From Ophelia neglecta (Eukaryota): a stretch of 64,000 nucleotides of DNA. The translations under genes and the position numbers were made by a program. Shown here piece after piece: positions 1,357-62,730 of this stretch. The DNA is taken from positions 23,188,001-23,252,000 of the forward strand of contig OZ260667.1 in NCBI GenBank assembly GCA_965285935.1, read 5' to 3'. Below the pieces are notes generated by a model. That model worked only from the letters and a program-made list of their open reading frames with translations, ran no database searches and was not told where the DNA came from. Position 1 is the stretch's first letter, and each line of letters opens with the position of its first letter.

Positions 1357-2151
1357 ATGGACGAACAACCGCCTCCATATTCAGGTTCAGTATATATTTT
1401 TTATATTATGCCTTGTAACGAATACAATCTTTTTAATTAAACGGCATTGAATTGTGTTTCATTTGGTAATAGAAGAAAAACATTACTATATATCTACATT
1501 TTGGCCAGTGAAATGATGAGTACTTCACTGAAAAATATTGTACTGGTATCATAGGTAATTTTTTTTGTTATGTCAAGCTTAATAGAGCTATATATTATTC
1601 CCTGTTTCTTTCCAGAAGCTCCATCGACACAGCAGCCACAAGAGCTGTGTCCTGACCACCTGGCAGCAGCCACCAGACAACAGCCTTTGCCACCATATCC
1701 GGGGCAGCAACCTTTGCACCCTTACCCGGGACAGGTACAACAACCTTATCCGGGACAACAACCTCGGCAGCCGTATCCGGGACAGGCACAACAGCCGTAT
1801 CCAGGAAAACCAACCATTGGCAAGTCATACCCGGGACAATTTCATCAATCGAATATCGAAGTGTCCACGGCCCCAAGCGGCTCTTTAGCGAATAGCTACC
1901 TTGGATTCGCCATCTGCACCTGTATATTCTGCTGTTGGCCCATAGGTATTGCTGGTATCATATTCGCCGTGCGCACCAACGACGAGAACGGACGAGGAAA
2001 CTATGCCGCTGCTCGGAGAAACTCCGAACATGCCCTCTGGTGTTCAATGGCTGCACTGATCTTCGGAACCACGTGGTTAATAATTGTCATTGTTATGGCA
2101 GTCACTGGAAACTTGCACATCTATAATTCATATACATCGACTTATAATTAA
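1357..2151 (+). CDS. CD225/dispanin (PRRT1/IFITM-like) gene, copy 1; join(1357..1384,1616..2151)
   Basis: Exon after tttcag gives MDEQPPPYS+G (ATG 1357, weak donor gttcag at 1385). A phase-1 join to ttccag|1616 continues in the 1570 ORF frame. QQPYPGQ repeats are followed by a CD225 domain: SYLGFAICTCIFCCWPIGIAGIIFA...RGNYAAARRNS..ALWCS plus a C-terminal TM. Likely 5'UTR exons end at 180 and 454 (gtaagc donors). Confidence 0.9.
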
Positions 2152-18572: not shown

Positions 18573-19680
18573 CTAACCATAATAATAAGTATGCCTATAA
18601 GAGTAGGGGAAACTCCCCGTGGCTGCGAGCGCGATTACGACTATGATCCAAACGCTACCGAAGACGAGACCAGCAACTGAACACCAGAGGGCTACTTTGG
18701 AGTTGCTTTTTGCACCTTCCAAGTTTCCTCGAGCATTTTCTTCGTTAGTGCGCACGGCAAAGATGATCGCAGCGATACCTATCGGCCAGCAGCAGCAAAG
18801 GCATGTGAAAATGGCGAATCCCAGGTAGCTGGACACGTACTGACTTGTATTCGTTTGATTAACAACCACAACTGACGACTGTCCCGGTTGTCCTGGGTAT
18901 GGTTGCTGGAATTGGCCCGGATATTGTGGTTGTGGTTGTCCCGGATACGGTTGAGCTGGATACTGTTGCCCCGGATACGGTTGCCCAGAATACGGTTGCC
19001 CAGGATACTGCTGCTGCATTGCATATCCGGGCGGCGATTGTCCTGCAGTGAATTAGTTTTCAATCAATCAGTTCGAATTCCTTATCTTATCAATTCAATT
19101 TAATTATTAACATCTACTTTTTTTCTGTAGTACTGTAGTATTTTTATTTAAATGTTAGAACCGTAAATTCATGGGAAATCTGTTAACGTAAGTTTTAAAG
19201 ATAAGTCACTTAAGAACAGTTAAAACTGCCATTGATATTGACAAGAGGCAAAGAGTCATCTTTATTAGGATAGGAGTTTCACAGTAACCAAAATTCACTC
19301 GTCTTCCCACTGAGCTTGATACATTCAGGCCGCGTTGAATATATAGTGCAACACATCAAATATGCGAATCTTTACAAATAACAGAGAGAAGGCCTTATTT
19401 ATTTAACCCATAAGGGTTGCCCCAGTTGCAATACCTGCGGCATGATTCGGGATATACAGTGAAACCTGTGAGTTTAGACCACCCAATGGGCGGGCAAATA
19501 CTGGTCTGATTATAGAGGTGATCTATTTACACGGGTTATTTTACGTTAAACGTGTATACTATGGTCTTCGAATTAGTGGTTTGAATTGGTAGGTGGTATG
19601 AATATAAAGGTGGTCTTTAAGGCAGAATTCCCTGTAATAATGTTACCTGCATTATAGGCTGGTTGCTGTTTCTCATCCAT
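18573..19680 (-). CDS. CD225/dispanin gene, copy 3; complement(join(18573..19042,19647..19680))
   Basis: First coding exon MDEKQQPAYNA+G|gtaaca; acceptor ctgcag|GACAATCG; CD225 core nearly identical to copy 2. A 5'UTR exon ends at 21782. Confidence 0.92.
19457..19634. mobile_element. pogo/Tigger-like MITE with TA target-site duplication in the intron of dispanin copy 3
   Basis: ta|cagtgaaacctg ... cagaattccctg|ta; CAGT termini and TA flanks are typical of the Tc1/mariner-pogo group. Confidence 0.75.
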
Positions 19681-27460: not shown

Positions 27461-28256
27461 TTAATAATAATGATACCGGTAAAAGAACAAGTTTCCTGTG
27501 GATGCAAGCGCGATAACGACTATGGTCCCAACGGTACCGAAGATGAGAGAAGCTACTGAACACCAGAGGGCCACTTTGGAGTTGCTTTTTGCACCTTCCA
27601 AATTTCCTCGAGCATTTTCCTCGTTGGTGCGCACGGCGAAGATGATCGCAGCGATACCTATCGGCCAGCAGCAGCAAAGGCAGGTGAAAATGGCGAATCC
27701 CAGGTAGCTGGACACGTACTGACTTGTATTCGTTTGATTAACAACCACAACTGACGTCTGTCCCGGTTGTCCAGGGTAAGGCTGCCCCGGATATTGTGCT
27801 TGTCCCGGATATGGCTGTTGCGGATACGGCTGCATTCCATATGCCGGCGGGGGTTGTTCTAAAATTAATTCATTTTTCAAATGATCCATCTAATCGACAA
27901 CAATAAACTTATGACACTCTGGCTTTGTCCTGTCGACAACCAGCGATTATTGTTATATACAAATAACGATATATAGGTGAGTTTGAATAACACATAAAAA
28001 CCATCATTATTTAAAGTGGTCATGTCTGAATTTACCCTGATAATTGACTTTGATCTAACGTTACTTCATCGGCTGAATAAATTACACCAAAGTGAGCAGG
28101 GTGTTCTGATTTAGATTAATCACTCGATATAATTATAAAGTCAATGGCTTATTATTTTGTAAGTCGTCTGCCTCATTTCATTTAGGCTCGTCCATTTGAT
28201 GGATCGAATAAAAGATAAATACCTGGATTATAAGGTGCTGGTTGTTTATTGTCCAT
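27461..28256 (-). CDS. CD225/dispanin gene, copy 4; complement(join(27461..27858,28223..28256))
   Basis: First coding exon MDNKQPAPYNP+G|gtattt; acceptor ttttag|AACAACCC giving EQPPPAYGMQPYPQ...; CD225 core almost identical to copies 2 and 3. Confidence 0.92.
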
Positions 28257-33704: not shown

Positions 33705-34813
33705 ATGGCGTACCTGCACACGTCAACCGCCTACCCAGACGACATAGTGTGCCATGATAAAGGTAAAGCTAGGAAACTATTTCCTATAAAAACCTTAGCA
33801 GATATTTTTAGGCTACATAAAATCTGGCTTCTGTCTTGCAAACCGCATGTGAAACAAATATTTAAGGTGTCTGATTTGTTCATTTATTAGTGGATGTAAT
33901 GGCAGTTTTTCTAGTGATTGCTTTTTTTATTAGACCTACATTTCTGGAATTGGATAATAGCATGAAACATGTTCATAGTTTGGAATATGTCAAAGTTTTG
34001 TTTTAGAAATAATGTTCTGCAGTGCTGATGCATAAAAAGTATTAGAGCAGCCAACTTCCACTATGGTAAGACCGAATTCAGCAGGCTATTAAAACGCAGT
34101 TTCCACCAAGCTTAGACTAATGGAATGAAACGAATTGATATACCAACCCTATTACATAAGGCTCATGTTACAGTATTTGAAATATACTGTTAACGGTATA
34201 CATTACATGAAATGTCTATGTCTATCCAGGAGAACAATACGCCACAGCATATCGAGAAGACCCACAGCTGTCACAGTCGCGCAGGGCGCTAGGCTACCCG
34301 TACCAGTCACAAATCTCGGCAGACGAGACCTCAGGACTAAAGGAAGCGGAACCAAACCTGAATCAAATATCGGGTGAATTGTATCCGCTGAAAATGCCTA
34401 GTCAGCAATTCTTCCCTCTAGGATCAGGGCAAACATCCGCTGAATCAGAATTTACAGAACCAAGCCAGGAATATTTACCAACCGAAAAAAAATCCGTTCA
34501 ATCACTCTCGTTGCGCTTAAGCCAAAAAAGGGTTGTTGTGGCATCCTCACCGAAGGATCCCTCCACCAATTTTCCGTTGGCCATCTTGGCTACGATTCTT
34601 TTCTGTCCAGTCACCGGCGCATTTGCCATTTTGTACGCGGTTTTCGCCCGTAAGAGGATACGTATCGGCCATATGGGGGCAGCAGCGGGTTACGGTTGTA
34701 TATCTTTGTGCTTTTCGATAGTGTCCATTGTTATCGGAATGTCGGTGTACATCGTAATCATAGTGATTGCAGCTACTCGTTACCGTTTGATACAGTATGG
34801 TTATGGAAACTGA
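33705..34813 (+). CDS. CD225/dispanin gene, copy 5 (divergent); join(33705..33762,34230..34813)
   Basis: tttacag acceptor at 33690; MAYLHTSTAYPDDIVCHDK+G|gtaaag; phase-1 join to atccag|34230 stays open into the 34379 ORF. CD225-like PKDPSTNFPLAILATILFCPVTGAFAILYA...GHMGAA plus a C-terminal TM. Confidence 0.85.
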
Positions 34814-36920: not shown

Positions 36921-37799
36921 ATGAGTCGTGCTAACTCCTCTACCGAATCGGAAGGCAACCGCGTGTCTTTTATGCCAGGTAATTAGGGTTTATACTGACG
37001 TGTACAGCATGCACCATTAAAAATAATGAAATGTTTGTGATGCATATATACGCCGATGAATAGAAAGCGGGTAAATATAAGCACGTGATTGCCACCATAT
37101 AAAGTATACAATAATAATTATGTTCTACCAGTCGAATTGGTTAACAAGTACTTTATTAATGTTTATAAAAAAAAAAAGGCCAAGGGACATAGAATAATTT
37201 TACATTCAGTCTAATATAGGGATTTCCACAAATACTGTTCCTTGAGAAAATACCTGATTAATGCAGATAAATACAAAGAAGAAAAGAAACAACCGATGAT
37301 GCAATCTCTGGAGCCGGAATACCTTGAACCCGTAGACACGCCTACAAAAAAAAGCTCCCACCACCAGTACCCTGTCGATTCCACTTCTCAGCAGCCGTAC
37401 AAGTATGGACCCCCTCCTAATCCTTATAACCAATCTATGGAACCCCCTCTTCAAGCGTCGTCTCAGCAGGGTTCTCTAGAACACGAGTCAAGCATGGCTA
37501 GTACCTTCAAGACACAGGTCAATCACTTCGTATCACCAGCCGAGCCAATTTTATGGTATCATTGGTGCCTTGCCATAATGGCAATATGTTGCTGTTGTGT
37601 TTGGGGAATTATATCAATAATTTTACTATGCATGGGTAAATCGGCCGACAGTGATGGTAGAAAAGGACAGGCGGCAGGATACAGTTATATGGCACTGATC
37701 TTTAGCATGGTTGCCATCGCCATTGGCACTATTGCTCTGATTGTAATCATAGCTCTGGGGGTGTCGCATTACGAATACTTGGACTTTTGGATTTATTAA
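36921..37799 (+). CDS. CD225/dispanin gene, copy 6 (divergent); join(36921..36978,37267..37799)
   Basis: MSRANSSTESEGNRVSFMP+G|gtaatt; the in-phase acceptor ctgattaatgcag|37267 gives an open frame. CD225-like WCLAIMAICCCCVWGIISIILL...DGRKGQAAGYS..ALIFS plus a TM. A 5'UTR exon ends at 36494 (cag|gtgagt). Confidence 0.85.
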
Positions 37800-39821
37800 A
37801 GTGTCTGCGAAATAATGCTACACATATGGCTTACCATATTTTTTGTTGGCACGGCGGTATAAGTGTACAAAGCTAGATCCATTTGAATTGAATTGTGAGA
37901 AATACAATGTAGATAATAATATTCACTTAATTGTTTGCAATCAAATGTTCCTGTATCATAAATCGCGAATATTTTATTGAGGTTGACGTATATTTTTAAT
38001 GTCGCGGCAAATTTAAGAAGAGTTTGCTATTTAGGCAGCATTCAAAATGCTTATAATAATTTAGAATGTATAATTCTTAGTGAAACTATTTGGCGTAGTA
38101 CCTCATCTTAAATGTGTAGATGAAGCTGGTAATTTGCTTATACTAATTATTTCGCAGATAGATTACTATTTGCCTGTTACATATTCCATTTGTATATTAT
38201 GCGTTTTTTCTCTATGGCAACTGTGTTGTTCTTCGTTCTTTATTCATACCTTTATTAATTAGTGTAAATAAAATGGTTTATTTTATATTTTTACATTAAC
38301 ATATGTAACGCATATAAAGACATGCGGAAACTTGTATGTTTGTCAGTGATGAATAAAACCAATAAACATATATTTTTTTATTCCAACTACATAAAAATTA
38401 TAGTCAAGGTATATAAATGATTGAATAAAAGGACAATAATGACACATTCAATTTGATGTTGACCAAGCACCTTTACGTGAAAAGCAAGCACATATGGTTT
38501 ATTTTTACACTTTGAATTCGTTCTAGTGAGAATAGGCATCCTAAGATTCCACTCCTGGTGGTGGCTGTTTGGAAGTTATGGCTGTAATTGTTCGAATCCA
38601 GTCCCCAAATAACGCTGTTTTATTTTCCACGGTGCATGTGTGAGGCAAGAATATGTGCAGACGAAGTTATTTACCCATTTAGTAAAAAAAAAAACATGTC
38701 TTTCATAAATCCACCCATACCTTGGAACTGTTTATATAGCCCTCCTAAATATCTATCCTCCTGATTCAAACTGTTCTAAGTCTACCGTCTATGTGCATTG
38801 TATTACCAAATATTTAACAATATTATTCCTCCTTTCTTCTTTTTATTATACAAAAATGTACAAATATCTCACATGTGAATCAAACAGAGAAAAGCAGAGG
38901 TAACTAGCTAGCGTATATTGTGGCTGAAGGTTTGTTTACAAAATAAATAACTTATGTAGGTCATGAAAATGTACGAACTGCACGATGCACAATAAGAAAC
39001 AGTTTGATAAAAAAAAACATAACATTTGTAACTAGTATTTTATTAATATAGAAAAAAAACCGCAAACACAGAGATTTAACATTGGGTGTTATTTCAATAA
39101 TACCGACATGGACATTTTAAATGTGAACACACTGCTTATAGAGCAGTGCTTACCACATCGTGATGAATATGCTGTGTGTTGTCCACATTGGTGTGGTTTC
39201 TTGATTCTTCACGCGATGTTTTTCTACCGGGCACCGGATGCGCATTATATATCTTGCCGGGAGTCACGTGTTCCGAAAGCACGTGACTGTATAAATCTGA
39301 CCCTGAATTGTGTCTTCGGTGTGGCACTGGTGGCGTCTCCTCCAAGTAATTGCCAATATCAGCGTCTGGATAATATAAAAGCCATAAAATTTATATTTTG
39401 CGGTTGATAAAATAAGTGAAAGCAAAGAGGAGTCCTTTAAATGGGAATTGTGTATTGTGGATCGTGTAACTGAACGGTGCCTATTTATTGCCTTTTTCAA
39501 ACTTTATAGTAATATCCAGTAGTAGTACTTGTTTAAAAAAACAAAAAAAAATCTACATTGAACAAAATGGTACGATTATTGTACTTAATCACCGTAAAAT
39601 TGTTATCAACATTATATCTACGCTATTGAAATCTCTTGATTATATATATATGTATATATTTGCACCGGAAGATCAAAGCTCACCTGCTCTTCAACTATAC
39701 TAGGTCCATGACTCCCCGTGTAACCACAACATAGAGAAAACTTCCTAATAGTATGCGTTTTGAGAGGTTTCAGTTATAGAACAGTGTCCTAAAAACCATT
39801 TTAAACGCTTACCTGATGACT

Positions 39822-42800
39822 TCATTGGAAACCGTCGTTAATGTACCCAGTTGGGAGCACACTTTTATCGGGAAAGAAACCCTTGGCTTTGAGTTCTATG
39901 TCTCTTGGATCAATGAGATTGTCTATTGACGGAATACGGACTCCTAGACCAACTCCTATTGGCTTACTTTCCTCTAGAACACGTGAAAACGTACCATACA
40001 TCAATGCCCGGTGAAAATGACACTCACCTCGAGCTCTGACCATGCCTTTCTTATAACGAACATGCATCTATCAGCCTTGACCAAATCTACAATTTACCTT
40101 CTAGGAACCCTTTTGGAATGTGAAAGTTTCGCATTTTTTGCTGGTTACGTTCTCCGCTTGTTCCCTTGCTACCCCTACCTTGTAATTGCGGTCAGGCCTT
40201 AAACCCTTCACCCGACTGGCCTCTCTTGCAGATCATTCGGAGATGTTCATGCATATCCTTGAAAATGGAAGAAAACATGCACAAAAACACGAAGACATTG
40301 AAAGCACACAAATTCTCTAGTGTACCAAGCCATGCACATTCAGCACAATCCAAATTCAGACAGAAAGAGTGGATCATATCTTCACATGCCGGCACATGGT
40401 TAAGGGCTAAAAAGGATGCAACAGCTTTGCAGATTCTACCCTGCCCACAGACGAACATCGAATATTTGCTAGCTAAGCAACCTACATCTAACACAATATT
40501 ACCAGTTTCACATTGGATGGTTACATAGCATTTCGCCCCTCATATTCACTGTCAAAGGAGGGATTGACCTCATACCGACCACTGACGACGGAGAGCGCAT
40601 GCTCAGAGGACACACGACGCTTACCTTGATGGAGAGAGAACCGGACATGCGTTTAAGGTTAGTTGACGGAAGCAGGTGTTACCAAATGGGAAACAGGAGA
40701 GCCTTTTGAAGTTAAGCTTCAAATAACAGTCTATATGTTGTGTAAACAAATTATAAAACAGGGCACAGCCTAGACATATATCAAAACAAAACACCGAACC
40801 ATAGGAATTTCGGTAAAACGATGATTTGTATTGGATTCTACTAGCATCGAGAGTTACTTCTTACAGTCATATGCCAAAATCGGGGTGTTCCAACTAACAA
40901 AGTAAGGAGATGGATCATATTTCGACCACACCGATTTCTGCTGGGTAGATAATGGACTATATCTGATCTGTTTAGTCGCTGTACATGTATTATGTATTCA
41001 ATTAAAGCACATGCGAAAAAGAGTATTTTATAACCAACCCAAAAATATGCACATGGAAGGGTAAAGATTTGAAAGATTGAAAAAAAGCATTTATGTTAGC
41101 ATAAAACAAATGATAATATTCACCAGATATATGCAATTAATGTCTGAAGTATACTGACTTACAGGAAATTAAATGTAATAAAGGCACTGCATAAATTTAT
41201 AGACATAAAACACTATATACATGACGAAATACAGAGCCACACAAAACAATCATGGGCCGTGACATAATTTACCTTGTTGAGGCCTTTCTGGGCCCCTTCT
41301 GTTGGGTACTGAATAAGCCACCTCTCCGTCTACACTATTAGTTGATGGCCCTCTGGAGGGATTTGCTTTGGGTGTCGTCATTAGTGCCATTTTGGGAACG
41401 AACACGAAAACAAGCACAACCGAAGCATTGATAGTTATGCCTACGCAAATGGCGGGATTTTGATAAATTGGACCGGCCAACATATACGCGCAAATCCAAC
41501 AGACTAAGATGATTATTGTTAGGAATGAAGTCATAGCTATGTACACCGCCTCTCTGTGAGTTTCTAGTGAATTGACAGATTTCAACGAGATTATGAGCGT
41601 CAGCAGCACCAAGAGGAACACATAAACTAATGACGTCACCAATGCGTTTTGTGTGTATGCGCAACGCCAGTTTATTGCGTATATTGGGTATTCGCCCTCT
41701 TCTTTGATATTGGTAAGGTACCAACGAACATCTGCTGGTTCTAGAATTAACCACTCGATCGAGATTATAAGTTGTATAAATATTAAAAGGAAGGCGAGGC
41801 AACACTGACTCGGACCCCCTATAAACGGAACTCTTCCACCCAAGCTCGCCCTGTTTGTCATTCGGTTTATACGAACTACTTTTATCAGGAGGCATGCGAA
41901 GACGACAGCGTAGAACGTTGCTAGGCCCAGCCTCCGGATACCACAGGTAGCATATGTGGACGAAATCATGAATGGGAAAATGAGCAAGTAGAGCAGGATG
42001 ATTCCAATGAGGAGCATGACGCTTAGGCTGCATGTGGCGGCCTCCACTACTGGATGTTTAAAGTTGAAAAGGAAGAACATCATGATGACGATAGCGAATA
42101 TGATTCCGAGAAGAGCTATTGTTAACACGATCACTCCCCAGACCTCACGATGGGCGGCCATTTCAACAGGAACGTTCTCTTTGTCCAGCAATGGCTAAAA
42201 CAAACATGAAACCTAAGTCACCAACTATTCTATTTGTAAGTGTAAAAGCAATTGCCTGTTGAACATTCTAATGCAAAATTCTGTTAATATCCAGTTTAGG
42301 AATGTCAATAGCTGTTAAATGTACAGGAAACTTATAATAGCTTAATACTCTTTCAGTTTCTCATGGGTATTCGTATATTACCTAACTTCCCACTATATCC
42401 GAAGTTCAAAATTTGACAAAACGTTTTGGATTCAACCGTTTGAGAAAGCATGAATTAGAGTATAGTTTAAATAGCATACCTGGCGTTGTGAACAGTTACA
42501 AGTACCCGGACACACTGATACGGGAAAGGCTAGCTTTCCGTCGCTGTTGTACATGCGCACTGATGACCTGTTTAGCTGTAGCCGCCCTGCATCCCAACGC
42601 CCAATCTGTAGTCAGATAAAAAGTTGCTACAGTCACAAGAGGGAGTACAATTTATGTTACCCCTCTGATTTATCGATGTTTGAATGATATATGTACAATA
42701 GGTTTTCAGAAAAACGGTGGCTGATTATAATTTAAGCATGCCTTTAAGCAAGTTGCTTGTAAACATATCATTGTAAGACGGATAGCCATTTACCAAAAAC

Positions 42801-45800
42801 GTATGTCACGTTGTATTCGATAACTAGATAATCGGACTAAACCATGTTCACGTGATTTGTATTAGTCTCTTCGTTATCAATGTGTTTACCTGCACAAAGC
42901 TTGTTGCGCCTTCCTTGATCTGAACATTAAAGATTCGAAATCTTCCAGGTCCACTTCCCTCCGGGCTGTATGAAAAATACATGCCGTCTGCTCCAGTCTG
43001 CACCCGTGCGTCCTTGATAAATTCCAATGTCATGTCTGCTTCATCTAAGCCTAAGGCATACATAAGACAGTTTAACTTAATAATAGGGGCATTTTTCTTT
43101 ACCTGCGCCCAATTTATATTCGGTAAAAAGTCATTCAGGACATTGCTTTGAACTGTTCAACATTTACTCAAAGGGCGATTGTTTCGCCCAAGCCTTTATC
43201 AACAGTGAAGGAAATCAGACGCATTCAAATCATTTTGTATTGCTAGTGATATACGAAACAAAACCTTTGGACAGAAAATGATTGTAGAAAAGATCCACTG
43301 TAGTTTCTTTTCTTACCAATGACTGCTATCAGATCATCAATGTTACACATATTTTTTTCTTGTTGAAAACTATAAACCACTACATACCCATCATACTGGG
43401 ACATGGTGGCAAGGTGAAAGCCCCGCAAAGTTGATCGAACATGTTCGTAAGTCCTTGGGCGTAGGAATACACAGCGTTGATTGTACTGATCACTGATTGG
43501 CGGTCACTAAACACGGCGTCTTTAAGACTTTCCTTGCCAGTGCAAGGGCGAGTGTAGCCACCATTGTAATCCACATTGCATTGGAAGTGGGTCTGCCAAA
43601 ATTCACGAAACCATGGGTTGTTTGGATCGCTCAACAAATTTTGTTTCTGCATGAAGGCATCGAATTTCGGGTTCGATGTTACGTCTGGAGCTACTAATAA
43701 AGCTCCTTTCAGCACATCCAAATATGGATTAATTTTTTCCCGCTCATGTGCCCACGTGTCAAACCCAAGCCAAACAAGGCGACCGACCACATCCTTGTGA
43801 GTTGCCACCTGCAGACGCCGAAGAACAACACTTGTTCAGAATTATTTAAATCAATGGAAGAATATATCTAAATTCAATTAGATGCCAACACCACATGAGA
43901 TGGCTTTATGTTGTGGCTTTTTCTTCGACCTTCGAAATAAATCGAAGTAACTAACCTGCAATAAATGACCAATGCCCTGTGGGTCAGCGAGTAATACCAC
44001 TCCTATCGCGCCTTTGGTCTGCAGAAGTGTATCAATCACGTCTTTATATTGGTCAGGCCCGCTCGGCGTCTCATTGATGGATAATGATACGGCAATACAA
44101 ACACCACTGTCCTCCAGTGCTGATCTTATAATACACAATGTTAGGTGTTTACTTATATGACATATGCTTATAACAAACGACATGCATGGGTGATATATAA
44201 TTTTATAACATAGTATCCCCCTTAATTGACACTACATATATACCGAAGGAGAGGTTCCATCATTCGAGCACGTTTGCTGTCAGATACCACTAGCGACAAA
44301 TAGGTCCATCCCAAGGCTTTTACTGCCGCCACCAGACAGCGTGCCTCTGTGTCTTCTGCTGCAGCCGTGCGCAGAAGAAATGGGTACTTTTTAACATCCA
44401 TGGTGCGGGATCCTGGAGTTACCTGATAATAAAAAACATCAAATTGATGCAATGCAAACTCGATACTGGGACTACATTTTTTTGCTATTGAATCAATGAA
44501 GGATAATCGAGTAGTTTGCTGGTATTATCCCCCTGGCAGGATAATATTTGAATTACCTGCACCCATCGTCGTCCACGATAGTTCATTTTGTTAAGGTCAC
44601 TGGTAGTGTCACTCTCATATCCACCAATGAACGCCTGGACATAGGTCAAACGAGGAACTTGAGGACGCTGAGAAAATAAGCGTAGTTGGTCTCGTGATGC
44701 TGCAAAAACTGTTTGCGCCTGCTTTGTGTCTGAACAAGTGTCAAAAGCCATATAACCAAGTCGTAGCTCCGGCAGTAGAGCGGTGCTGTTGTTGACTTGG
44801 TCGATGGCATACTTGAAAGCCATAAAGTCAAGAAAACCCATATCGCTGCGATATTGTGCACATAGGGAGCCCGATTCACTTTGCTGATGAATGGGGAAGA
44901 AACCCATGAGGGTAAGCTGTTCGTATTGTAGTTGGAATTTGAGATCGGCGATGGTCATGTTAGTACATAAACAGTCAACACACTGGGAAGAGACCTGCGT
45001 ACTCGGAATGGGGTCACCTGACGAGTCCAGGAATGCATACAGGTCCTTCACCCGCAAAAGTAGGATTTCCTTCACCCATGTCCCTACCTATAGAAAAAAT
45101 GCTCACTTCATTGTTTATTCCCGGAAAGTTTGTTCCCAAGATACTGCATACTATTTTTTACTGAAAACGATGGCTGTCCTCAGTCACGATCGATATTATT
45201 ATAGCATAAAGGCAAATCAAAGCATATTGCATATTTGTGCAATGGAAGCAGGGATCGAATATACTTGTTAAATCAGATGTGTGATTTTTGTCCAGACCAA
45301 CTCACCAGAGTGTATTTGAGCTTGAAAGTTTTGTCTCTGCGGAAATTGTACACATTATAACGAGGAATGCCATTTCCCAGAACATCGAATGTAACATTGA
45401 GACCCGTAATACTGTTATGGAAGTCAGATATCTCCATATAGTCGTATAAAGATACCATATTATGCTGTGCCTCGCTGCAGATTGGAAAGGTGATCTCCTG
45501 GCAGTAATCTACACAAGGGTGAAATATACCACGGTAATATATCACGGTTTCTAAACATCCCAGAAAATGAGATAAAAACCAATAAGGTGATGTTGCGACG
45601 TGCTTAATTATTTACTATTAGTACTAGTGACCCCTAGGCCATGGGGGGCGTCAAACCAGTCAGACCAAAGTTACCTATTATCATGTTATGGAGGGCTACC
45701 ACAGCAGCATAGACAGCGTCGATGACGTAAGGGACCTGATCGGCCATTTTGATGTCTTGGGTTTGTAGTGAAAGTCTTTGTCCCGGAGCTTGTTGGCATC

Positions 45801-48800
45801 TGGTGATAGATAAGATGACAGTATTAAATAGAAAAGCGCATACATTTTGTATTTTTGTTATCGATATACGCACAAACATCTAAAACAGTTTCAGTCGAGG
45901 AGCTTGGTTCCGGAAACCTACGGGTTTGGATATTCCTGACGTAGCGCGTTGTCAATATGACATTCGAAATGACGCTGCCAGTATTCAGCAAACCAGGGAT
46001 TGCGTCGTGTGTCCTGAGGATGAATATTCCGAAAGTAGGTCATAAAGGGTTTCACTTCCTCCGCATAGAAGCCTAGCGTAATGGCACCCTCGGCAACATT
46101 TTCAATGTCTTTGACTACCTAAAAAAAAGCCATATTTTTTCAGAACGTATATTTGTGGTGCAGGGCCATAACTCTCATTTACTTTCCCTGATTCTTACCT
46201 GTGCCCTTGAACCCCAATAATCCGAGGCTACCCACACAATGCTGTTTGTTCTTCCTGCTAGGGTACGTTTCATGGCTGCCAGAAGTTCCCTAGCGTCTGT
46301 GTCTGTCGTAAGTAGAACGACAACACTGGCATTTTGAAGTCCTCTGATTAGGTAATACTTAGCTACATTGTTCATTGCCTCTCGATCCCGGGCAAAATAG
46401 TCCTCTAGGGGAACCTAAGGCGGAATAATAGGTAAATCCAACTAACAAAAGCATTAAGAAGGTTTTATTATTGATAACTTTACATTTATAAAACAAATGA
46501 GACCACGCGTTATTTTTTTTATTGCGAAATGTATATAACTATAATATCTAATTATATATAAAATTGTTACCTGAGTAGAGACACAAATTTTTTCTTCTTC
46601 AGCGACGGTCATGAATTCTCTGAAGGCCGCCTTGCCATATACATTATTTGAGTAAACCGCGGCAACGGTTCGCCAATTATACTGAATCAAAATATCAACG
46701 ATAGCACGTGCCTGCGCACTGTCACTTCCAACCGTTCGAAGGAAATAGGGGTATTTCTTTCTGTCCGACAGTTCAGCATTAGTTGCTCCATAACTCACTT
46801 GTGGAATCTAGAAATACAACAAAACTCACTTCTATCACAGCAGGTATTGACGCAAAGTCTATACAAGGAAGATATTATTCAGGACTGTTAATTGCTTTGC
46901 ACATTAAATCTTTGGGGTTTGTCAATGTATATATTAACCTTGTGGCTTGTGAGGAGCTCAGCTAGGGCCATGGTGACGTCACTACTAGCTCCACCAATGA
47001 CAACGTTCGGAGACATGGGTTTCCTATTCTGGTCAGCAATGATCATTTCCTTGTTAAGAATTTCCTTTACTTGTCTAGCAGCTCTTGCAGGATTCCTGCA
47101 ACTGTCCAGAGCAACGCCAGTCAACTTGATTCCGGGAAGGATAGCCGAGTCTAGATTGATTTGATCTATAGCAAAGTAGAATGCTTCCAATGCCTGAATA
47201 GCATTAGAGTCGATATCGGTAAAGTCGCACTCTTTACCGAAAGCACCCGAACTGTGAATATCAAATATTCCAGGTATCATGATATCTCCAGGCAAGTCCA
47301 TTCCGTAACTGAAATATGTAGATCAATTGCTGTGAAATGTGATGACATAAGAAGTTGTCTGGAGACGTTAGAAAACGTACATTTCTTGTAATTCCTTTAC
47401 CTATTGTCAAACTTGCTGTTGGCGCAGGAACAAACCACATTACATTGTGAGGGAGGAACGATGTTCAGTGGAATGCCCTCCCTATCATAAAACGTGATGG
47501 GACTCTGGCCAGTCAGATCCAAGCCATTGGTGCTTGTCCATTTACCAACCTATGAAACAACATAACATGTATTAATATGTTGCCTTGCTTATGGTAAACT
47601 GTTCATAACTTTTCACCTATCAGATCGTAGTACATATATATTTATTGGGACAGCTTGATAATAATTCACCTGTTTCATAAGGTACGATGTCCCATCCATC
47701 TGTACATTCATGATAGCATACTTTGCTGTCTCAAGATCCCCATTCGCACCAAAAGAAATAAATTCCTGTTTAATAAAGAAAAACCGGCTTTTGATAGTCA
47801 GCTGCGCAATGTTAATAAAGGGAAAATTAACTAATATAAACAATAACGAATAAGTACATAAAGTATAATTGTAGTTTGATTGCCTGATCTTTGGTGACGA
47901 ACTCTGTCTGTTTCATATAGCTAACGAGTTCCTGCGCAGTGACAGCTCCCAGTGCATTGCAGGTGCCGGAAGTTCCTGCCTTACATAAATTGTAATGAGC
48001 ACTTTTCATGGCATATCCATAAGCCTCTACCGCCGCTATCACTTGAGATACTTCGATTCCCTGTTTATAATGCTGAGCATGATCAGTCTTTGATCCAGTA
48101 GTACATGTTTGGTACAAAGTACAGTTATTGACTTGTTCCCAATAATCAGGAAACCATGGATTCCTCTGATAACTGAAGGGGTCTAGGCTAAGAAAGTAGT
48201 TCCGGAACTCAGCCATATCCCCACTGTATTCCTCCACGGCGATAAGGCCACGAATGAACTGAGAAACGTTTGGTGATTCATATTTCCAGCTGTCCCGAAA
48301 TGGATGTGCAAGTAACCATTGTAAGTCGGCTATTTTTTCATAACGGGAAGAATAGAAGTCTAGCGTCCGAAAAAGGTTTTCTGTGATGCCTGGTAAAGTC
48401 AACAGGATCACCCCACGGACACCTGCGAGAGAGAGTTAAAACCAGCCTTCACAAAGAAGGAATTTTGTTTTCAGATGGTACTGTATTATTAAACAATATA
48501 AAATGGTATTTTTAAACACTCCAACAACTAAGGCACACTGATATATTTGTGGTTTACCTGTGTTATGTACTTCCACGAGTTCTGCTACCGTCTTGTCGTA
48601 AAAAGACCCGGCCATGTCTATTTTGATGACCGGGGTAAGGCAGATATCTTCTCCGCCCGCCAATCGGTGTAATTCTGATAAAAGATCTGCAGCGTCCGGG
48701 TCATCGCCGGCAACCACTGCTACATCGTACCAGCCAAGCTCCCGTAGAATGTCTATCAATACCTACAATATAATAACACATATAATGATAATTGAAGATT

Positions 48801-50139
48801 GGATGCGTGCCGGCTATAGAACTTTTCATCACTTTACGGCAGCCGATGATGTAAATTCCTTCTGGTACGAAAGGCTAGAAAAAGAATTTGTTGTTGTTTA
48901 TTTATTCCTCTTGTTTATCGATGTATAGCTTATAGATAAAATTTAGTGCTAACCCTGGCAATGATCTTCCCTTCTGGTATTGTCCTTAAGAGGTACGGAT
49001 ATGTCTCCTTGTCACTGAGGTCAGATACACGCGCGCTGTAGATAATTTGCGTCACATGAGCAGAACTAAACAAAGAAGCAACCTTTAAAGCTTCTTCGCT
49101 GTAGTATGGTCCAACAGAACCTACAATAACAATGCGGTGTTATGATTATATGTACATTTGAAGCTAAACTAGCCGTCAAACTAAACCAAGCCTCATAAAC
49201 CGTGTTTGGTGTGTTAGACCAATAAAATAATTGTCATTGTCATTGTTAAAAAACAGAATAAATTAATCGCTGGAGTAACCTACCGACAAAGGCCGGCCAG
49301 TAGTTACATTGGTTGTTCTGCCCGGCTTGTGATGCTTCTCGTCTTGCGAGGTAGTTCAGAGCCCTTTTCCCAGCTACTTCGCTACGTCCACAAGTGTCGT
49401 ATACCAGGGCCCCTGGTAAATAACATTAAATCACTTAAACTGTAAAAAGGACCTTAGGGAGGGGCAGGGGATTTACAACCTTTTTCCAGGAATATTTCAA
49501 CGTTATTACTATGAACGTCATCTCTCTTATGAGCTATATATGAGCATACTGTGGTTCTTTTGATATATAAATGTAAAATGATCGAAAAAACTGGTTAAAT
49601 TTGGTTGAGTTTTGGTTAAATTTGACAAACATCAATGAATTTGACAAAATTAATATCAACAACATATGCAGTCTCGCGTTAAGACCGTCAAACTTTCTAA
49701 ATATCAGTGTTTAAAGAAAATATATAATTGAACACTAATTCTGGTGTAGAATATATATTCGTTAATGTATGTAGGGGGTTAGGGGACACTATGGAGCATG
49801 GTGTAAATAAGTTGTTTTAAATTCTTTTTACGATAATAATATATCTTCAATTATATATAAAGTGTAGACGAGGTTATTACCAAAAGTGACTCCCGGGACA
49901 AAGTCCAATGCATTGAGATTGTCAATGGTAAAAAGAAAGGCCTCCATCCTCTGTATGGCGTCCGGGTTGATAGTTGACCCACACTCCTGGCCAAGCGGCC
50001 CCGGTTCATGTATGTTAAAAAATCCTCCTAGCACCAGATTACCGGGTACATTTACAAATGGGGCTTGAGGGCATGACTGGGAATAAGTTAGGCTGGGTAA
50101 ATATAGGAACAGGACCAGAAAAGGCATAGCAGCTGACAT
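39822..50139 (-). CDS. Class C (metabotropic glutamate receptor-like) GPCR with three tandem VFT/ANF_receptor domains and one 7TM, about 1850 aa
   Basis: Phase-consistent exons (minus strand): 50139-49881, 49412-49284, 49120-48954, 48762-48558, 48422-47884, 47765-47670, 47549-47401, 47308-46939, 46807-46571, 46414-46199, 46118-45922, 45799-45675, 45508-45306, 45087-44557, 44422-44244, 44124-43956, 43808-43388, 43050-42890, 42605-42480, 42194-41273, 39973-39822 (5553 nt). One signal peptide (MSAAMPFLVLFLYLPSLTYS). The class C motifs G.F.IH, AF..ID..N, D[TS]C, YP..LRT, GW/NW, NPWF..W and G.W each occur three times. The terminal exon choice is uncertain. Confidence 0.9.
41273..42194 (-). other. 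Class C 7TM domain (7tm_3) exon
   Basis: Seven hydrophobic segments with class C motifs: PVVEA, CGIRR, LLIKVVRINR, REAVYIAMT, FVPKM. Confidence 0.92.
42480..44964 (-). other. GPCR VFT domain 3 and 3-Cys linker (SVCPGTCNC)
   Basis: LMGFFPIH, AFKYAIDQVN, FDTC, FIGGYES, KYPFLLRT, LGWTY, NPWFREFW, INAVYSYA, IGRW. Confidence 0.85.
44965..47308 (-). other. GPCR VFT domain 2 and 3-Cys linker (SQCVDCLC)
   Basis: PGDIMIPGIFDIH, EAFYFAIDQIN, LDSC, IGGASS, IPQVSYGAT, LSDRKKYPYFLRT, YG, ASDYWG, RNPWFAEYW, VIDAVYA, VGTW. Confidence 0.9.
47401..50139 (-). other. GPCR signal peptide, VFT domain 1 and 3-Cys linker (SQCNVVCSC)
   Basis: PGNLVLGGFFNIH, IQRMEAF, YDTC, GPYYS, LSDKETYPYLLRT, RNPWFPDYW, FGANGD, VGKW. 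Confidence 0.85.
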
Positions 50140-53100
50140 CTGTAAAATAATCAAACATCGTGACGGAACATTGGCCATGGGAGAATCATTTACAAAATAT
50201 CAGCTGTAATTGAACAACTAGTATCACATCAGTTTATTATACAGCGCATGTGTGCATTAGGAGTTTCGATAACATTACTAATTTCGCTTTACATGTGTTC
50301 ATATATACACTATACTGAATTTTCTAAATTGAAACATGTTTGACTGCGAAAACGCTGAAGTATTACAAATAAGAGATATGCAACCTAAGGCATAAATAAT
50401 GTAATATATTTATGATAATAATGTGCATGAAAAACACCAGTCCATTATCATATTTTGCCTAAGTTTGCCATGGACATTAAGTCAGACCATGGACTATTAA
50501 TATGTCATGGTTACTTTCTCAAAATCCCAGGGAAGAAACATCTGGATGTAGATATTGTAAAATACTACACTGGTCACATTGTTTTTGCCATTTATTCCCT
50601 CGAGAATAAGGGTCTGTGAGTAGGGTAGTGAATTACTAGCATGAGCCATGTGGTATCAACTGATAGCAGACAAAGTATACCTGCATGCAGGTTGTGACCG
50701 AGTATGAATCACCTGGCGCTCGGCACCTGGAACTGATCAGAAAAACCTAATGATATTCGCTCCATTGATTTTGGTCTCGAGAGGGAAGTGAATCATGAAG
50801 AAATGCCTGGCTGCACTGTTCGGTTCTGGTCAATGATGCGCGGTTTTATGCATAATTCATTAGATTAACAATGAAATGTAAAAGTTAAGGCTTACTCCTG
50901 GTTTAAGGCGAAAATTGAAGCTGGAGGTTAAACTGAAAACGCAGGCCGATCACAGCAGTATTGAAGAAATCGAATAGAAGATCACAGTCTTCACCTCCAG
51001 TGAATAAAACAAGCTAATATCTATTTCACAGTCCACCGTATTTTAATAAGTTCATTGTCCGAGTATCGTCCAAATGGACATCCTGGTCCCCGCAAGGCAT
51101 TTGCAGTAAACTAGCAAACAGGTATAGGTGTGAAACATGACGGGTGCCAGTACATATAGTACATAGCATCATACTTATTAGAGCATATAAACCTGTCTCT
51201 CCCGTAACCCATCCGCATCTTATATGTAAATGTTTATTTTCAATTATAATATATTGTTCCCCAGGCGCCTTAAATAGACTTCCTTTTTTTACTTTAGTCA
51301 TTAACAAAAATCCTAGCGGGGTGAGCCCACTTAGCTAGACGTTACATTACTTAATAATTGCATTTTCATGTTTTTAAATCACCGCGATTCCGACTCTTCA
51401 TCTCAAGATATTACCGACATATAATATTTTCGCAAAGACTTGAAAATATTTAAGTCTAGTCCAAAAAAATAGTATAAAATTTTTATGCAGTATTATATAC
51501 ACTTTTGACATCGCAAAATTTTCACCTGCACTGATTTGTCATTATTTTATGCCCTGGGCTATATGGAGTCCCAATTATATATAATGTCTGCATTTGACAT
51601 TGAACACATAAACTCGAACAGACGCGTATACATAGTAAATATACACAAATATCGTGTATTACTGTGGCAGATAAAGACTATTCGCAAAATGGATCTGTTC
51701 CCAGACTTTGGAGCCCACGCCACAGGGAGGTGACACACTCGTACCAATTGCTATTGAAAAATGATAAATCATTTGTAAAATGATTGTCTAAGTTGTGATC
51801 TCACAATTGAACGTCTTTGCTGTCAGATGGTTGGAATTATGGTAAATCTTGTGGAGTGTCCCTTGTGACATTTTCATGCTAATAATGGTTTACATTGTCA
51901 GATTTAAATGGATAAACGTTCACACTGCCAAGACTCTTTGTATAAAATGACTGATGGCCAATTTGAACTTCGTATATGGTCAACATAGCGCCCTGTTGTA
52001 AGCTGTTTGTATACTTTTAATACGAGATCTTTTCTCCTTTGAAGTCAAATATAAGGAAAACATTTCGGGTTCAATATGCTGTATAAATTGAATTATTTTT
52101 CGGTAAATCCAAAGGGTTTTATTTGGTCAACAACGATAAAAAACAAGGAACCTTTGTCAATATGTTAAGTCATAAGGGTATGTTAAAATAAGCATTTCTC
52201 CTCTCATGGGTGGAATGATATCTTTGAGAGTATAGACTTGGGTTTCATTCAAATAACTGCATATCCCAAGTAAAGTGACTTTAACTATATTGTTTGGTTG
52301 AATAACTTAATTTCTGTCTGAAAATGAATATTGTTATACATACATGTATACAGAAAAAAACGGAATAGGAGCATATCAAAAATAAATCAACCTAGTCAAG
52401 AAATATCGTCATATTACACTTGGACCTCGAAGTAGCACAGTTTCTTGCAAATCTATCCGTTTCTGGTTACTTTGTCGGCATATATTTTCTTGGAATATTC
52501 ATCAGTTAAATTTGAAAAGTTGAATCCTTGAAACAGAAGACTCTGATAAACAGTTCTTACCTTTAAATATGTATGAACAATATGAAGTCCTTCGATCGTG
52601 GTGAATTTTCCTTAACTAAGAGTGAAATTCTTCTCCCCTTTCCATATGTGAACGCCATGCAGCACAGCAGCTCCGTGAAGCAATAATGAGGTTTTTAAAG
52701 GCTAAGGTGCGTCTCTACTGCGCCAGTAATGTATAGAGCGAAGGTATCCAGCAGCAACAGGTGTAGAAGGAGATCCCATTCAAGAAGGTCACGATTTCAA
52801 AGCTCAAATAACCCCAGTTAAACCAATCCCATAATGGCACATTCTCTGGCTTTCAAGTTGAAATCAAACACTCAGCTAAGCTTTGATACTCTGTGCAGCA
52901 AGTATTGTTCTTGGGTTCAATTATGAATTTAAGCGTCTGCTGGGATTTCAATTTTCTTCAAATTGACAATATGCTAAATGGGTCACACTTTCGTTACATT
53001 TTAATGTAAATAGTAGGTGCGTAATTGAAATGCAAGTTATACTACAGCTTATGTAAGTAATACTACACGCACTCTTAAACGTAAACGTTTCATGAAATTG

Positions 53101-61375: not shown

Positions 61376-62730
61376 TAAAACACAATACCTACCAATAAGC
61401 TGGAAAAGAAACCCCAGCTACCCTGAAATTGTTCTAAACGGCACTCAATTAGAGAGAACAAATAGCGCGAAACATCTTGGCCTCACTATGAATTCCAAAT
61501 TTAGATGGAATAATCACATCGGCGCCATTTCCTTGGCAGCCGCTCGCAGACTAGGCTTATTGAAACTGCTCAAATATCGAGTTTCCCGTATTGGTCTTAC
61601 TTCCGCTTATCGTACCTTCGTCAGACCACTTCTGGAATACAGCTCCGTTATATTTGACAGCTGCCCAGAATCTGAGGCCAAGGTCTTAGAGGAAATCCAA
61701 CTGGATGCCCTCAGACTTATCACTGGCATACGACGCGGTACCTCTCACCAACTTATCTACTCAGAGAGTGGATTTCGCCCCCTCCGTGAGAGACGAAAAT
61801 GTGCCAGACTGCTCAAATTGCGTTCAATTATTCACCATGATACACCAGAATACCTCTGGAGTAATCTCCCACCTTGTCAGCAACTGACCCGTTATAATAC
61901 TCGTAGCAAACGTCTGAACAAAATTTCTCTCCCTCGAGGCCGAACTGAGCACCTAGATCGAACCTTCTTGTATCGAACTGTCAACGATTGGAACCACCTA
62001 CCTCTGAATGTTAAACTGGAAAGTAACAAACTATCATTCAAAAGACGTATCAATCCAACATATAAACCCCTATTGAAATACTATTTCCTTGGGAAGAAGT
62101 CAACCCAAATCATCCTGGCCCAGCTGAGAACAGGCTGTAGCAAACTCAACCACCATCTGTTTTTGAATAAATGTATCGAGTCCCCAGCTTGCGAATGTAG
62201 CTTTCCCGAGGAATCTCCTCAACATCACTTCTTCCATTGTCCCTTATATACGGTGTTTAGAAATTCCTTCCCACCAATATTGACCTCTCTTGATATTATT
62301 TTACATGGCACATCCAATATCAATTTTAATAATATTATCATCACAGCGTTGGAATCATATTTTACCTCATGTTCCCGCTTGAACTGACCACATCGTACCA
62401 CTCCATTTGAATAACCATACAATCTCCAGGTAGCATGCACATCCTCATACCACTTTCTCACCCATCACTCACTCATCCCATTTCCCTCAACCAAATACTG
62501 CATTCTTTTTTTTTCCTATTTTAGCATGTAGTAATCCATAATAATTCATGCTTGAACTGAGGATATCCTATATCCAATTGTGTAGCACGATACCATATTT
62601 TCAATTATCAAATATTATTAGCATGACGCACATTTAATTTTTGTTTAAATTTCAATGCACCACTGGGGAGATCTCCCGATTAGTATATTTACTATTAGAT
62701 CAATCCAGAATAAATAAATATGTTTAAACT
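61376..62730 (+). mobile_element. 5'-truncated CR1/L2-group non-LTR retrotransposon with a 12-bp TSD (AACTCCATAGTG at 61364-61375 and 62731-62742)
   Basis: Exact flanking direct repeat, internal ORF2 fragment, and a 3' end reading aataaataaatatgtttaaact. Confidence 0.92.
61488..62387 (+). CDS. C-terminal part of LINE ORF2 (RT thumb and Cys/His region)
   Basis: KHLGL just upstream in frame, W..HI, YRTFVRPLLEYSSVIFD, WNHLP, QLRTGCS.LN.HLF, CEC...ESPQHHFFHCPLY. The M start is internal and the N-terminus is missing. Confidence 0.9.
   Translation: MNSKFRWNNHIGAISLAAARRLGLLKLLKYRVSRIGLTSAYRTFVRPLLEYSSVIFDSCPESEAKVLEEIQLDALRLITGIRRGTSHQLIYSESGFRPLRERRKCARLLKLRSIIHHDTPEYLWSNLPPCQQLTRYNTRSKRLNKISLPRGRTEHLDRTFLYRTVNDWNHLPLNVKLESNKLSFKRRINPTYKPLLKYYFLGKKSTQIILAQLRTGCSKLNHHLFLNKCIESPACECSFPEESPQHHFFHCPLYTVFRNSFPPILTSLDIILHGTSNINFNNIIITALESYFTSCSRLN

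What the first reader, a model, noticed from the sequence alone, without database searches (positions are those of the whole stretch)
39822..50139. Class C GPCR with three tandem Venus-flytrap domains on one 7TM
Seen: three complete sets of VFT motifs lie in one phase-consistent exon chain, with one signal peptide, no TM or stop between the units, and one 7TM at the end. The VFT2-to-VFT3 junction lies inside one exon (45087-44557), so that join does not depend on splice prediction. Established: mGluR, CaSR, GPRC6A, T1R, V2R and GABA-B subunits carry a single VFT. Inference: a dimer would present six flytraps, which could allow multi-ligand integration, an extended adhesion-like stalk, or intramolecular allostery. 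Similar architectures may exist as uncharacterised invertebrate gene predictions, but I know of no functional description.
Basis: partly seen in the sequence, partly recalled or inferred. Interest (0 to 1): 0.92.

Follow-up and report, generated by a model that had tools for sequence, protein, structure and literature searches.

The report
Three-flytrap class C receptor gene
[quoted passage not shown] It belongs to an old, widespread invertebrate receptor family with two to five such domains, for which I found no published description.

Summary
On the minus strand, 20 exons (50178-41250) join into one 5,463-nt frame of 1,820 codons. It has 18 GT-AG introns and one GC-AG intron, all 80-468 bp. 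The protein reads signal peptide, VFT1, VFT2, VFT3, 7TM. There is no stop, no transmembrane segment and no NCD3G domain between the parts.

The VFT2-to-VFT3 join lies inside one exon (45087-44557). A related animal's contig (L006) keeps all 20 exons collinear and open. Matching units are 53-60% identical; non-matching units are 23%.

The gene is not unique. Predicted proteins with 2-5 tandem VFTs on one 7TM exist in hemichordates, echinoderms, amphioxus, molluscs and arthropods. Three public contigs carry uninterrupted 2,376-2,730-codon ORFs of this kind. First units form one clade, so the layout predates the protostome-deuterostome split.

Six literature searches found no description, and a 2025 survey lists only three metazoan class C ectodomain types.

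Inferred division of labour: VFT1 keeps the dimer-disulfide loop cysteine, VFT2 alone keeps the amino-acid-binding signature, and VFT3 relays to the 7TM.

No RNA data exist for this species. The scan also noted this stretch in two other first-reader notes.

The parts
49881..50178 (-). Exon 1: ATG at 50178, signal peptide (aa 9-27), start of VFT1 lobe 1
   Evidence: donor TTG|GTAATA, phase 1
49284..49412 (-). Exon 2 (VFT1); holds the lobe-1 loop cysteine
48954..49120 (-). Exon 3 (VFT1)
   Evidence: matches mGluR1/T1R3 flytrap at chain positions 120-180, E 2e-6
48558..48762 (-). Exon 4 (VFT1)
   Evidence: ANF_receptor profile positions 110-175, sub-threshold (17.1 bits)
47884..48422 (-). Exon 5 (VFT1 lobe 2 and return to lobe 1); the only GC donor
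   Evidence: mGluR2 flytrap E 1.5e-13; the GC donor at 47884 gives the same length as VFT2
47670..47765 (-). Exon 6 (VFT1 end)
47401..47549 (-). Exon 7: linker 1 (VGKW ... C-x3-C-x-C), followed by a 92-bp intron
   Evidence: no NCD3G, no polyA signal in the intron
46939..47308 (-). Exon 8: start of VFT2
   Evidence: ANF_receptor 2.2e-11; mGluR2 6e-13
46571..46807 (-). Exon 9 (VFT2); holds the T188 and D208 equivalents
   Evidence: 4.4e-22; mGluR1 8.7e-18, residue-level alignment
46199..46414 (-). Exon 10 (VFT2)
45922..46118 (-). Exon 11 (VFT2)
45675..45799 (-). Exon 12 (VFT2)
45306..45508 (-). Exon 13 (VFT2 end)
44557..45087 (-). Exon 14: linker 2 (VGTW ... C-x2-C-x-C) and the first half of VFT3 lobe 1, in one open frame
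   Evidence: ANF_receptor 1e-8 at aa 89-162; P0176, 60% identical homologue of the whole exon
44244..44422 (-). Exon 15 (VFT3)
   Evidence: fused to exon 14 in L006
43956..44124 (-). Exon 16 (VFT3)
43388..43808 (-). Exon 17 (VFT3 lobe 2)
   Evidence: ANF_receptor profile positions 206-294, 2.3e-5; 62% to L006
42890..43050 (-). Exon 18 (VFT3 end)
42480..42605 (-). Exon 19: linker 3 (IGRW ... C-x3-C-x-C) in place of the nine-cysteine domain
   Evidence: Logan fragments P0003, P0004 and P0011 read linker and 7TM in one ORF
41250..42194 (-). Exon 20: whole 7TM domain, short C-tail, TGA stop at 41252-41250
   Evidence: 7tm_3, 144.8 bits; mGluR2 2e-30

Best explanation
One gene encodes one 1,820-residue class C (glutamate-type) GPCR. 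Its order is signal peptide, three complete Venus-flytrap (ANF_receptor) domains joined by short three-cysteine linkers, then an mGluR-like 7TM domain. There is no nine-cysteine domain.

It belongs to an ancient bilaterian subfamily of class C receptors with 2-5 tandem flytraps. All of this is shown here, short of a transcript from this species.

The likely mechanism is inferred; I put it at about 0.4. The receptor dimerises like other class C receptors. The distal VFT1 is the only unit that keeps the lobe-1 loop cysteine at the place of the class C inter-protomer disulfide, so it clasps the dimer. VFT2 is the only unit with the full alpha-amino-acid-binding signature (the Ser165/Thr188/Asp208/Tyr236/Asp318 equivalents of mGluR1), so it senses an amino-acid-like ligand. 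VFT3 has a degenerate pocket and sits next to the membrane. It passes the closure or re-orientation on to the 7TM through the three-cysteine linker, in the place where other class C receptors use the cysteine-rich domain.
For: Gene structure:
- The frame is intact over 20 exons with canonical splice sites and short introns.
- The VFT2-VFT3 join lies inside one exon.
- The 92-bp intron between VFT1 and VFT2 has no polyA signal.
- VFT2 and VFT3 have no signal peptide or TM segment of their own.

Conservation:
- All 20 exons are collinear and open in the related locus L006. Unit identities are 53/60/59% on the diagonal against 23% off it.
- Within the read data, the three indels all lie in introns, and SNP density is 2.9/kb in exons against 8.0/kb in introns (Fisher p=0.009).
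- All seven conserved flytrap cysteine columns are kept in each unit.

Family:
- A single end-to-end local alignment joins the model to three-VFT proteins of Saccoglossus, Ptychodera and Branchiostoma.
- Pfam counts 3-5 ANF_receptor stretches plus one 7tm_3 in homologues.
- Uninterrupted multi-VFT ORFs lie on contigs L001, L004 and L005.
- First units form one clade (SH-aLRT 98).
- The 7TM domains fall outside the 100%-supported clade of canonical single-VFT receptors.

Mechanism:
- The amino-acid signature scores 5/5 in VFT2 and 2/5 in VFT1 and VFT3.
- The loop cysteine is present in 8/8 first units, 14/14 single-VFT receptors and 4/43 later units.
Against: - No RNA run exists for this organism, so the 47401/47308 join and 17 other joins rest on sequence and homology.
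- One donor is GC, not GT (47884).
- Pfam on the VFT1 exons alone stays under the curated cut-off.
- Positional orthology is clear only for VFT1. VFT2 groups with the third unit of four-VFT proteins (support 91), and VFT3 sits on a long, weakly placed branch.
- The mechanism rests on residue patterns only. Amphioxus members lack the loop cysteine in every unit, and arthropod members lack the amino-acid signature in every unit, so the division of labour is not universal.
- The dimer test on a relative's VFT1 gave no verdict.
Confidence: 0.82

Rival explanations
1. The locus makes several products. The three-VFT receptor is one isoform, alongside a secreted VFT1 from retention of the 92-bp intron, or a shorter receptor from an internal start.
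For: Read-through of intron 7 meets a stop after one codon, and the same holds in L006 (open frame ends at 7693). Retention would therefore give a soluble VFT1. A Saccoglossus cDNA record (P0005, 708 aa) holds only part of VFT3 plus the 7TM.
Against: P0005 is identical from its first residue to residues 1070-1777 of the 1,777-aa model. It starts inside VFT3 without a signal peptide, so it looks like a 5'-truncated clone. Intron 7 has no polyA signal. VFT2 and VFT3 have no signal peptide. Unit borders are not phase-symmetric: exon 7 ends in phase 2 and exon 14 starts in phase 0.
Confidence: 0.1
2. VFT1, or VFT1 plus VFT2, is a separate gene for a secreted binding protein that merely lies upstream of a normal single-VFT receptor gene.
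For: Soluble flytrap proteins related to mGluRs exist, for example SmGBP of Schistosoma (PMC3206071, abstract).
Against: Only 92 bp separate VFT1 from VFT2, with good splice sites and matching phase. VFT2 and VFT3 share an exon. There is no second signal peptide and no polyA signal. The same order is kept in L006, and it lies in uninterrupted ORFs in other species.
Confidence: 0.04
3. The chain is a decaying relic or a prediction or assembly artefact: exon-like remains of duplicated flytraps that are no longer expressed.
For: No expression data. VFT1 and VFT3 have degenerate ligand pockets.
Against: - A 5.4-kb frame without a stop.
- All structural cysteines kept.
- An orthologue at about 55-60% identity with every exon open.
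- Indels only in introns, and fewer SNPs in exons.
- Independent read contigs span the region.
Confidence: 0.03

Closest known systems
Metabotropic glutamate receptors (mGluR2/3 closest among solved structures)
   Same: The 7TM domain matches mGluR2 at E 2e-30, with the TM3 Lys and TM6 Glu of the ionic lock aligned. All three units have the flytrap fold with the conserved cysteines. VFT2 has the mGluR-type amino-acid signature.
   Different: There are three flytraps instead of one. There is no NCD3G domain, only a three-cysteine linker. The 7TM falls outside the 100%-supported clade of canonical single-VFT receptors.
Predicted multi-VFT class C proteins in public databases, e.g. Saccoglossus XP_077864807.1 (1,777 aa), Ptychodera and Glandiceps orthologues, Branchiostoma XP_035691717.1, Lytechinus XP_063971536.1, Saccoglossus XP_002735016.2 (4 units), Physella XP_059178375.1 (5 units)
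   Same: Same architecture, same linkers and same absence of NCD3G. They align end to end with the window's model.
   Different: Only 27-28% identical overall to the three-VFT models compared (Saccoglossus, Ptychodera, Branchiostoma). Unit number varies from 2 to 5. All are named 'uncharacterized' or 'mGluR-like', and none has a functional study that I could find.
GABA-B receptor
   Same: The flytrap is joined to the 7TM without a cysteine-rich domain. Labour is divided between a ligand-binding flytrap and a non-binding one (established knowledge).
   Different: In GABA-B the two flytraps sit on two subunits. The 7TM similarity is weak (E about 1e-6).
BvgS/EvgS bacterial sensor kinases
   Same: They have tandem flytraps on one chain, and homologues have one to five VFT domains. 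In BvgS a mobile membrane-distal VFT1 and a closed membrane-proximal VFT2 together set the output (PMC4352136).
   Different: These flytraps are bacterial periplasmic domains of another subfamily, and the output is a histidine kinase. There is no homology beyond the fold.
Ionotropic glutamate (NMDA/AMPA) receptors and the GlnPQ importer
   Same: Both stack two clamshell layers on one chain, with a distal modulatory or second-specificity layer. For GlnPQ see the abstract of bioRxiv 10.1101/2020.12.19.423572. For iGluR this is established knowledge.
   Different: The output modules differ (ion channel, ABC transporter), and the two layers come from different clamshell classes.

Membership tests
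Class C GPCR (Pfam 7tm_3) | 7tm_3 seven-helix domain | tested here: met
   144.8 bits against a cut-off of 33.5, profile positions 4-251 of 251; seven hydrophobic segments.
Class C GPCR (Pfam 7tm_3) | Extracellular Venus-flytrap (ANF_receptor) domain | tested here: met
   three sets; the conserved cysteines are present in each.
Class C GPCR (Pfam 7tm_3) | Constitutive dimer through the flytraps | tested here: inconclusive
   no verdict, on a relative's VFT1. The loop cysteine is present in VFT1.
mGluR/CaSR/T1R type | One flytrap followed by the nine-cysteine domain (NCD3G) | tested here: not met
   no NCD3G at E<=1. The linkers have three cysteines, and there are three flytraps.
mGluR/CaSR/T1R type | 7TM groups with canonical single-VFT receptors | tested here: not met
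   a 100%-supported split separates 51 canonical receptors from all 27 multi-VFT receptors, the window's among them.
mGluR proper | Glutamate-specific pocket residues besides the general amino-acid signature | not tested
   Only the five general residues were scored. S186 is Gly in VFT2.
GABA-B type | 7TM of the GABA-B clade; flytrap without a cysteine-rich domain | tested here: not met
   GABA-B 7TM E about 1e-6 against mGluR2 2e-30. Only the lack of NCD3G is shared.
Multi-VFT class C subfamily (database predictions only) | Two or more complete flytraps in one reading frame before a single 7TM | tested here: met
   The in-exon join is shown.
Multi-VFT class C subfamily (database predictions only) | First unit belongs to the clade of first units and keeps the lobe-1 loop cysteine | tested here: met
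   SH-aLRT 98; 8 of 8.
Multi-VFT class C subfamily (database predictions only) | Short Cys-x(2-4)-Cys-x-Cys linker after each unit | tested here: met
   seen after all three window units and after most units of the relatives.
Multi-VFT class C subfamily (database predictions only) | Made as one transcript | not testable with these tools
   no RNA run for this organism. Relatives have uninterrupted ORFs on L001, L004 and L005.

The most novel reading that the evidence does not exclude
Bilaterian animals have an undescribed fourth ectodomain type of class C GPCR: 2-5 stacked flytraps on one chain, dating from before the protostome-deuterostome split. The units have separate jobs. A distal unit clasps the dimer by a disulfide. 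Usually only one or two units sense an amino acid. Degenerate units, not a cysteine-rich domain, carry the signal to the 7TM. That would be a new way of activating a class C receptor.
Probability: 0.45. Interest if true: 0.8.

Novelty: new variant of a known kind. Interest (0 to 1): 0.68.

Why it matters
Class C receptors are the textbook case of activation by one flytrap per subunit. A December 2025 survey still lists only three metazoan ectodomain layouts: ANF+NCD3G, ANF alone, and Cache+EGF (PMC12716839).

A conserved family with two to five flytraps per chain raises three questions:
- How is closure of a flytrap two domains away from the membrane transmitted?
- What do the degenerate units bind?
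- Why was the layout kept in many invertebrate phyla, when I know of no vertebrate example?

The window's gene is a compact test case. It is 8.9 kb long, has three units, and only one unit has a canonical pocket.

Tried and rejected
- RNA evidence: the look-up of sequencing runs found no RNA run. The three runs that hold the stretch are unspliced genomic contigs of one sample, with no joints, so they confirm the DNA but not the transcript.
- Dimer test: complex prediction on two copies of VFT1 of the Saccoglossus relative (P0158 residues 28-502) gave no verdict (score 0.00, controls not run). This is no evidence either way.
- Literature: six searches and look-ups in four papers found no description of multi-VFT class C receptors. 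The library holds open-access papers only and matches exact phrases.
Rejected.
- Mutually exclusive flytrap cassettes: rejected, because VFT2 and VFT3 share an exon, the unit borders differ in phase, and there is only one signal peptide.
- Close paralogues of the VFT1 or junction exons in this genome: none.
- Left out: the joined (spliced) protein was never typed or sent to a database, fold or complex tool. It existed only in local scripts built from window.fa. There it was used for the frame check, for alignment to fetched proteins, and for the unit HMM and trees. A whole-protein Pfam scan and structure prediction of the monomer or dimer were therefore not done.
Full report
**What is there**

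The window is AT-rich animal DNA. It is G000:C12:23188001-23252000 of a 762-Mb assembly. On the minus strand between 50178 and 41250, the open frames carry pieces of Pfam ANF_receptor in three successive sets. One exon holds a complete 7tm_3 domain (144.8 bits).

I listed donor and acceptor sites that keep the frame. The best sites give a 20-exon model of 5,463 nt and 1,820 codons with no internal stop. There are 18 GT-AG introns and one GC-AG intron, all 80-468 bp.

Two details need correcting:
- The start codon is at 50178.
- The coding region ends at the TGA at 41250. The ORF at 40067-39825 has no family hit, and homologues end where the 7TM exon ends.

**Method limit**

All database searches used single exons by reference. 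The joined protein was built only inside local scripts from window.fa. It was never sent to a search, fold or complex tool. A whole-protein Pfam scan and a structure prediction of the joined protein were therefore left out.

**Is it one protein?**

- The model has one N-terminal signal sequence (residues 9-27) and seven TM segments (1527-1772). It has nothing membrane-like between the units.
- The three units (residues 35-527, 528-1020, 1021-1506) align over their whole length at 24-28% identity. The triplication is therefore old, and this is not an assembly duplication.
- Each unit keeps all seven cysteine columns that are conserved in 72-74 of the 76 flytrap units compared.
- Each unit ends in the same short linker, [VI]G-x-W followed about 30-40 residues later by Cys-x(2-3)-Cys-x-Cys. 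No NCD3G is detectable even at E<=1.
- VFT1 is weak in Pfam exon by exon. Its exons nevertheless match solved mGluR and T1R flytraps at the right positions (1.5e-13 and 2e-6).
- The VFT2 linker and the first half of VFT3 lobe 1 lie in one exon.
- VFT1 and VFT2 are separated by a 92-bp intron with good splice sites and no polyA signal.

**Conservation**

The junction exon has a 60%-identical homologue, P0176. It lies on an 18.8-kb ENA contig of a related animal, fetched as L006.

- All 20 exons are found there in the same order, open and without stops.
- Matching units are 53%, 60% and 59% identical. Non-matching units are 23% identical.
- Two introns (between exons 9/10 and 14/15) are absent there. 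In that species the linker-to-VFT3 join runs even further inside a single exon.

Read-derived contigs of one sample cover 42100-48000 in single pieces of 12.4 and 8.3 kb. Their three indels all lie in introns. SNPs are 10 in 3,392 exon bases against 20 in 2,509 intron bases (Fisher p=0.009). Five of the ten exon SNPs are synonymous. All three units are therefore under constraint.

**Relatives**

An exhaustive HMMER search with the 7TM exon returned many long proteins with the 7TM at the C-terminus.

- Pfam finds 3-5 ANF_receptor stretches and one 7tm_3 in them, and no NCD3G.
- A local unit HMM counts 2, 3, 4 or 5 near-complete units.
- They come from hemichordates (Saccoglossus, Ptychodera, Glandiceps), echinoderms (Acanthaster, Antedon, Lytechinus, Amphiura), amphioxus, molluscs (Physella, Bulinus, Babylonia, Argopecten, Mizuhopecten, Octopus) and arthropods (a tick, scorpions, a crayfish).
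- All are named 'uncharacterized' or 'mGluR-like'.
- The window's model aligns in one HSP, residues 20-1804, with the 1,777-aa Saccoglossus protein. It aligns likewise with Ptychodera and Branchiostoma three-VFT proteins.

These are not merely fused gene predictions. Three Logan contigs (L001, L004, L005, from three different runs) carry uninterrupted ORFs of 2,376-2,730 codons with several ANF_receptor domains and one 7tm_3. L001 also has an upstream in-frame signal peptide and a 3' tail with AATAAA, like an mRNA.

The only cDNA-based record is Saccoglossus NP_001161555 (708 aa). It equals residues 1070-1777 of the long model from its first residue, and so looks like a 5'-truncated clone.

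**Phylogeny**

In a tree of 73 flytrap units, the first units form one clade (SH-aLRT 98). This clade includes the window's VFT1 and the first units of molluscs, of a tick and a related unnamed (Logan) sequence, of hemichordates and of a brittle star. The layout with a distinct distal unit therefore predates the protostome-deuterostome split.

- VFT2 groups with the third unit of the four-VFT proteins (support 91).
- VFT3 is on a long branch and is weakly placed.

In a 7TM tree, 51 canonical single-VFT receptors form a 100%-supported group. All 27 multi-VFT receptors lie on the other side. With them lie 12 'single' entries; at least two of these have a 7TM identical to a longer multi-VFT model, and several others are short and look like partial models.

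Among solved structures, the 7TM is closest to mGluR2/3 (2e-30). It is far from CaSR and GABA-B (about 1e-6).

**How it probably works (inferred)**

I mapped mGluR1 numbering through the alignment of exon 9 to 1EWK. I then scored five general amino-acid-binding residues in every unit.

- VFT2 has 5/5. VFT1 and VFT3 have 2/5.
- The 14 single-VFT controls have 4-5/5.
- L006 shows the same pattern, with a conservative Thr-to-Ser change in VFT2.
- Most relatives also keep the signature in only one or two units.

In mGluRs and CaSR, the inter-protomer disulfide sits on a lobe-1 loop cysteine (established knowledge). That cysteine is present in 8/8 true first units and 14/14 single-VFT receptors. 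It is present in only 4/43 later units, and in neither VFT2 nor VFT3 of the window.

My reading is a three-storey dimer. VFT1 is the covalent clasp. VFT2 is the sensor for an amino-acid-like ligand. VFT3 is a relay that stands where the cysteine-rich domain stands in mGluRs.

There are exceptions. Amphioxus members lack the loop cysteine, and arthropod members lack the signature. A dimer prediction on a relative's VFT1 gave no verdict.

The nearest working analogues are:
- BvgS-type bacterial kinases, with one to five tandem flytraps and a distal mobile unit acting on a proximal closed unit (PMC4352136).
- The two-layer ectodomains of ionotropic glutamate receptors.
- The ligand-binding/non-binding pair of GABA-B.

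**Novelty**

Six full-text searches found no description of class C receptors with several flytraps. A 2025 survey of GPCR evolution lists only ANF+NCD3G, ANF alone and Cache+EGF for metazoan class C receptors.

The gene is thus a member of a family that exists in databases but, as far as I can see, not in the literature. I file it as a new variant of a known kind.

What is missing is a transcript from this species and any functional test.

Noticed in passing
L002:5156-9902 and L003:433-8372 (G000:C12:23278000-23291400, + strand, about 26-39 kb beyond the window's end): A second, very divergent multi-flytrap class C gene lies next door on the other strand. Several VFT-like exon groups are followed by one 7TM. 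One unit, together with its preceding linker, sits in a single long exon (L003:5276-6757).
   Followed up: partly
window 1570-2151(+), 3669-4103(-), 18573-19019(-), 27461-27889(-), 34379-34813(+), 37242-37799(+): A cluster of six single-ORF genes for small proteins, most with a Pro/Gln/Tyr-rich N-terminus, followed by what looks like a CD225 (IFITM/dispanin-type) membrane domain. Pfam CD225 was checked on three of them: E 1e-19 to 1e-20 for two, and weaker (7e-5, below the cut-off) for 37242-37799.
   Followed up: partly
window 47884/47765: The one non-GT donor of the gene: a GC-AG intron of 118 bp in VFT1. It was chosen because it alone gives the same segment length as VFT2. A GT donor 15 nt upstream (47899) is the alternative.
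   Followed up: partly
window 39500-41250 (minus strand, downstream of the stop): There is no AATAAA or ATTAAA within 1.75 kb after the stop codon, although the DNA is AT-rich. The 3' end of the transcript is undefined.
   Followed up: no
L006:8413-8880 and L006:9956-10663: In the related species, two of the window's introns (between exons 9/10 and 14/15) are absent. This shows intron gain or loss inside an otherwise conserved gene.
   Followed up: partly
proteins P0016, P0164 (amphioxus); P0063 (unnamed, Logan), P0126 (tick), P0046 (crayfish): Amphioxus flytrap units do not join the first-unit clade or other positional clades, and none has the loop cysteine. In the arthropod-type proteins no unit keeps the amino-acid signature. 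The family may have changed ligands or dimer mode in some lineages.
   Followed up: partly
window 61488-62387 (+): A 299-codon ORF without a Pfam hit. It resembles the tail of a retrotransposon polyprotein from memory only.
   Followed up: no
window 42100-48000: The three runs of one sample show different sets of SNPs: 6, 9 and 18 differences for the contigs that span all or most of the stretch. This is consistent with a polymorphic or pooled sample.
   Followed up: partly
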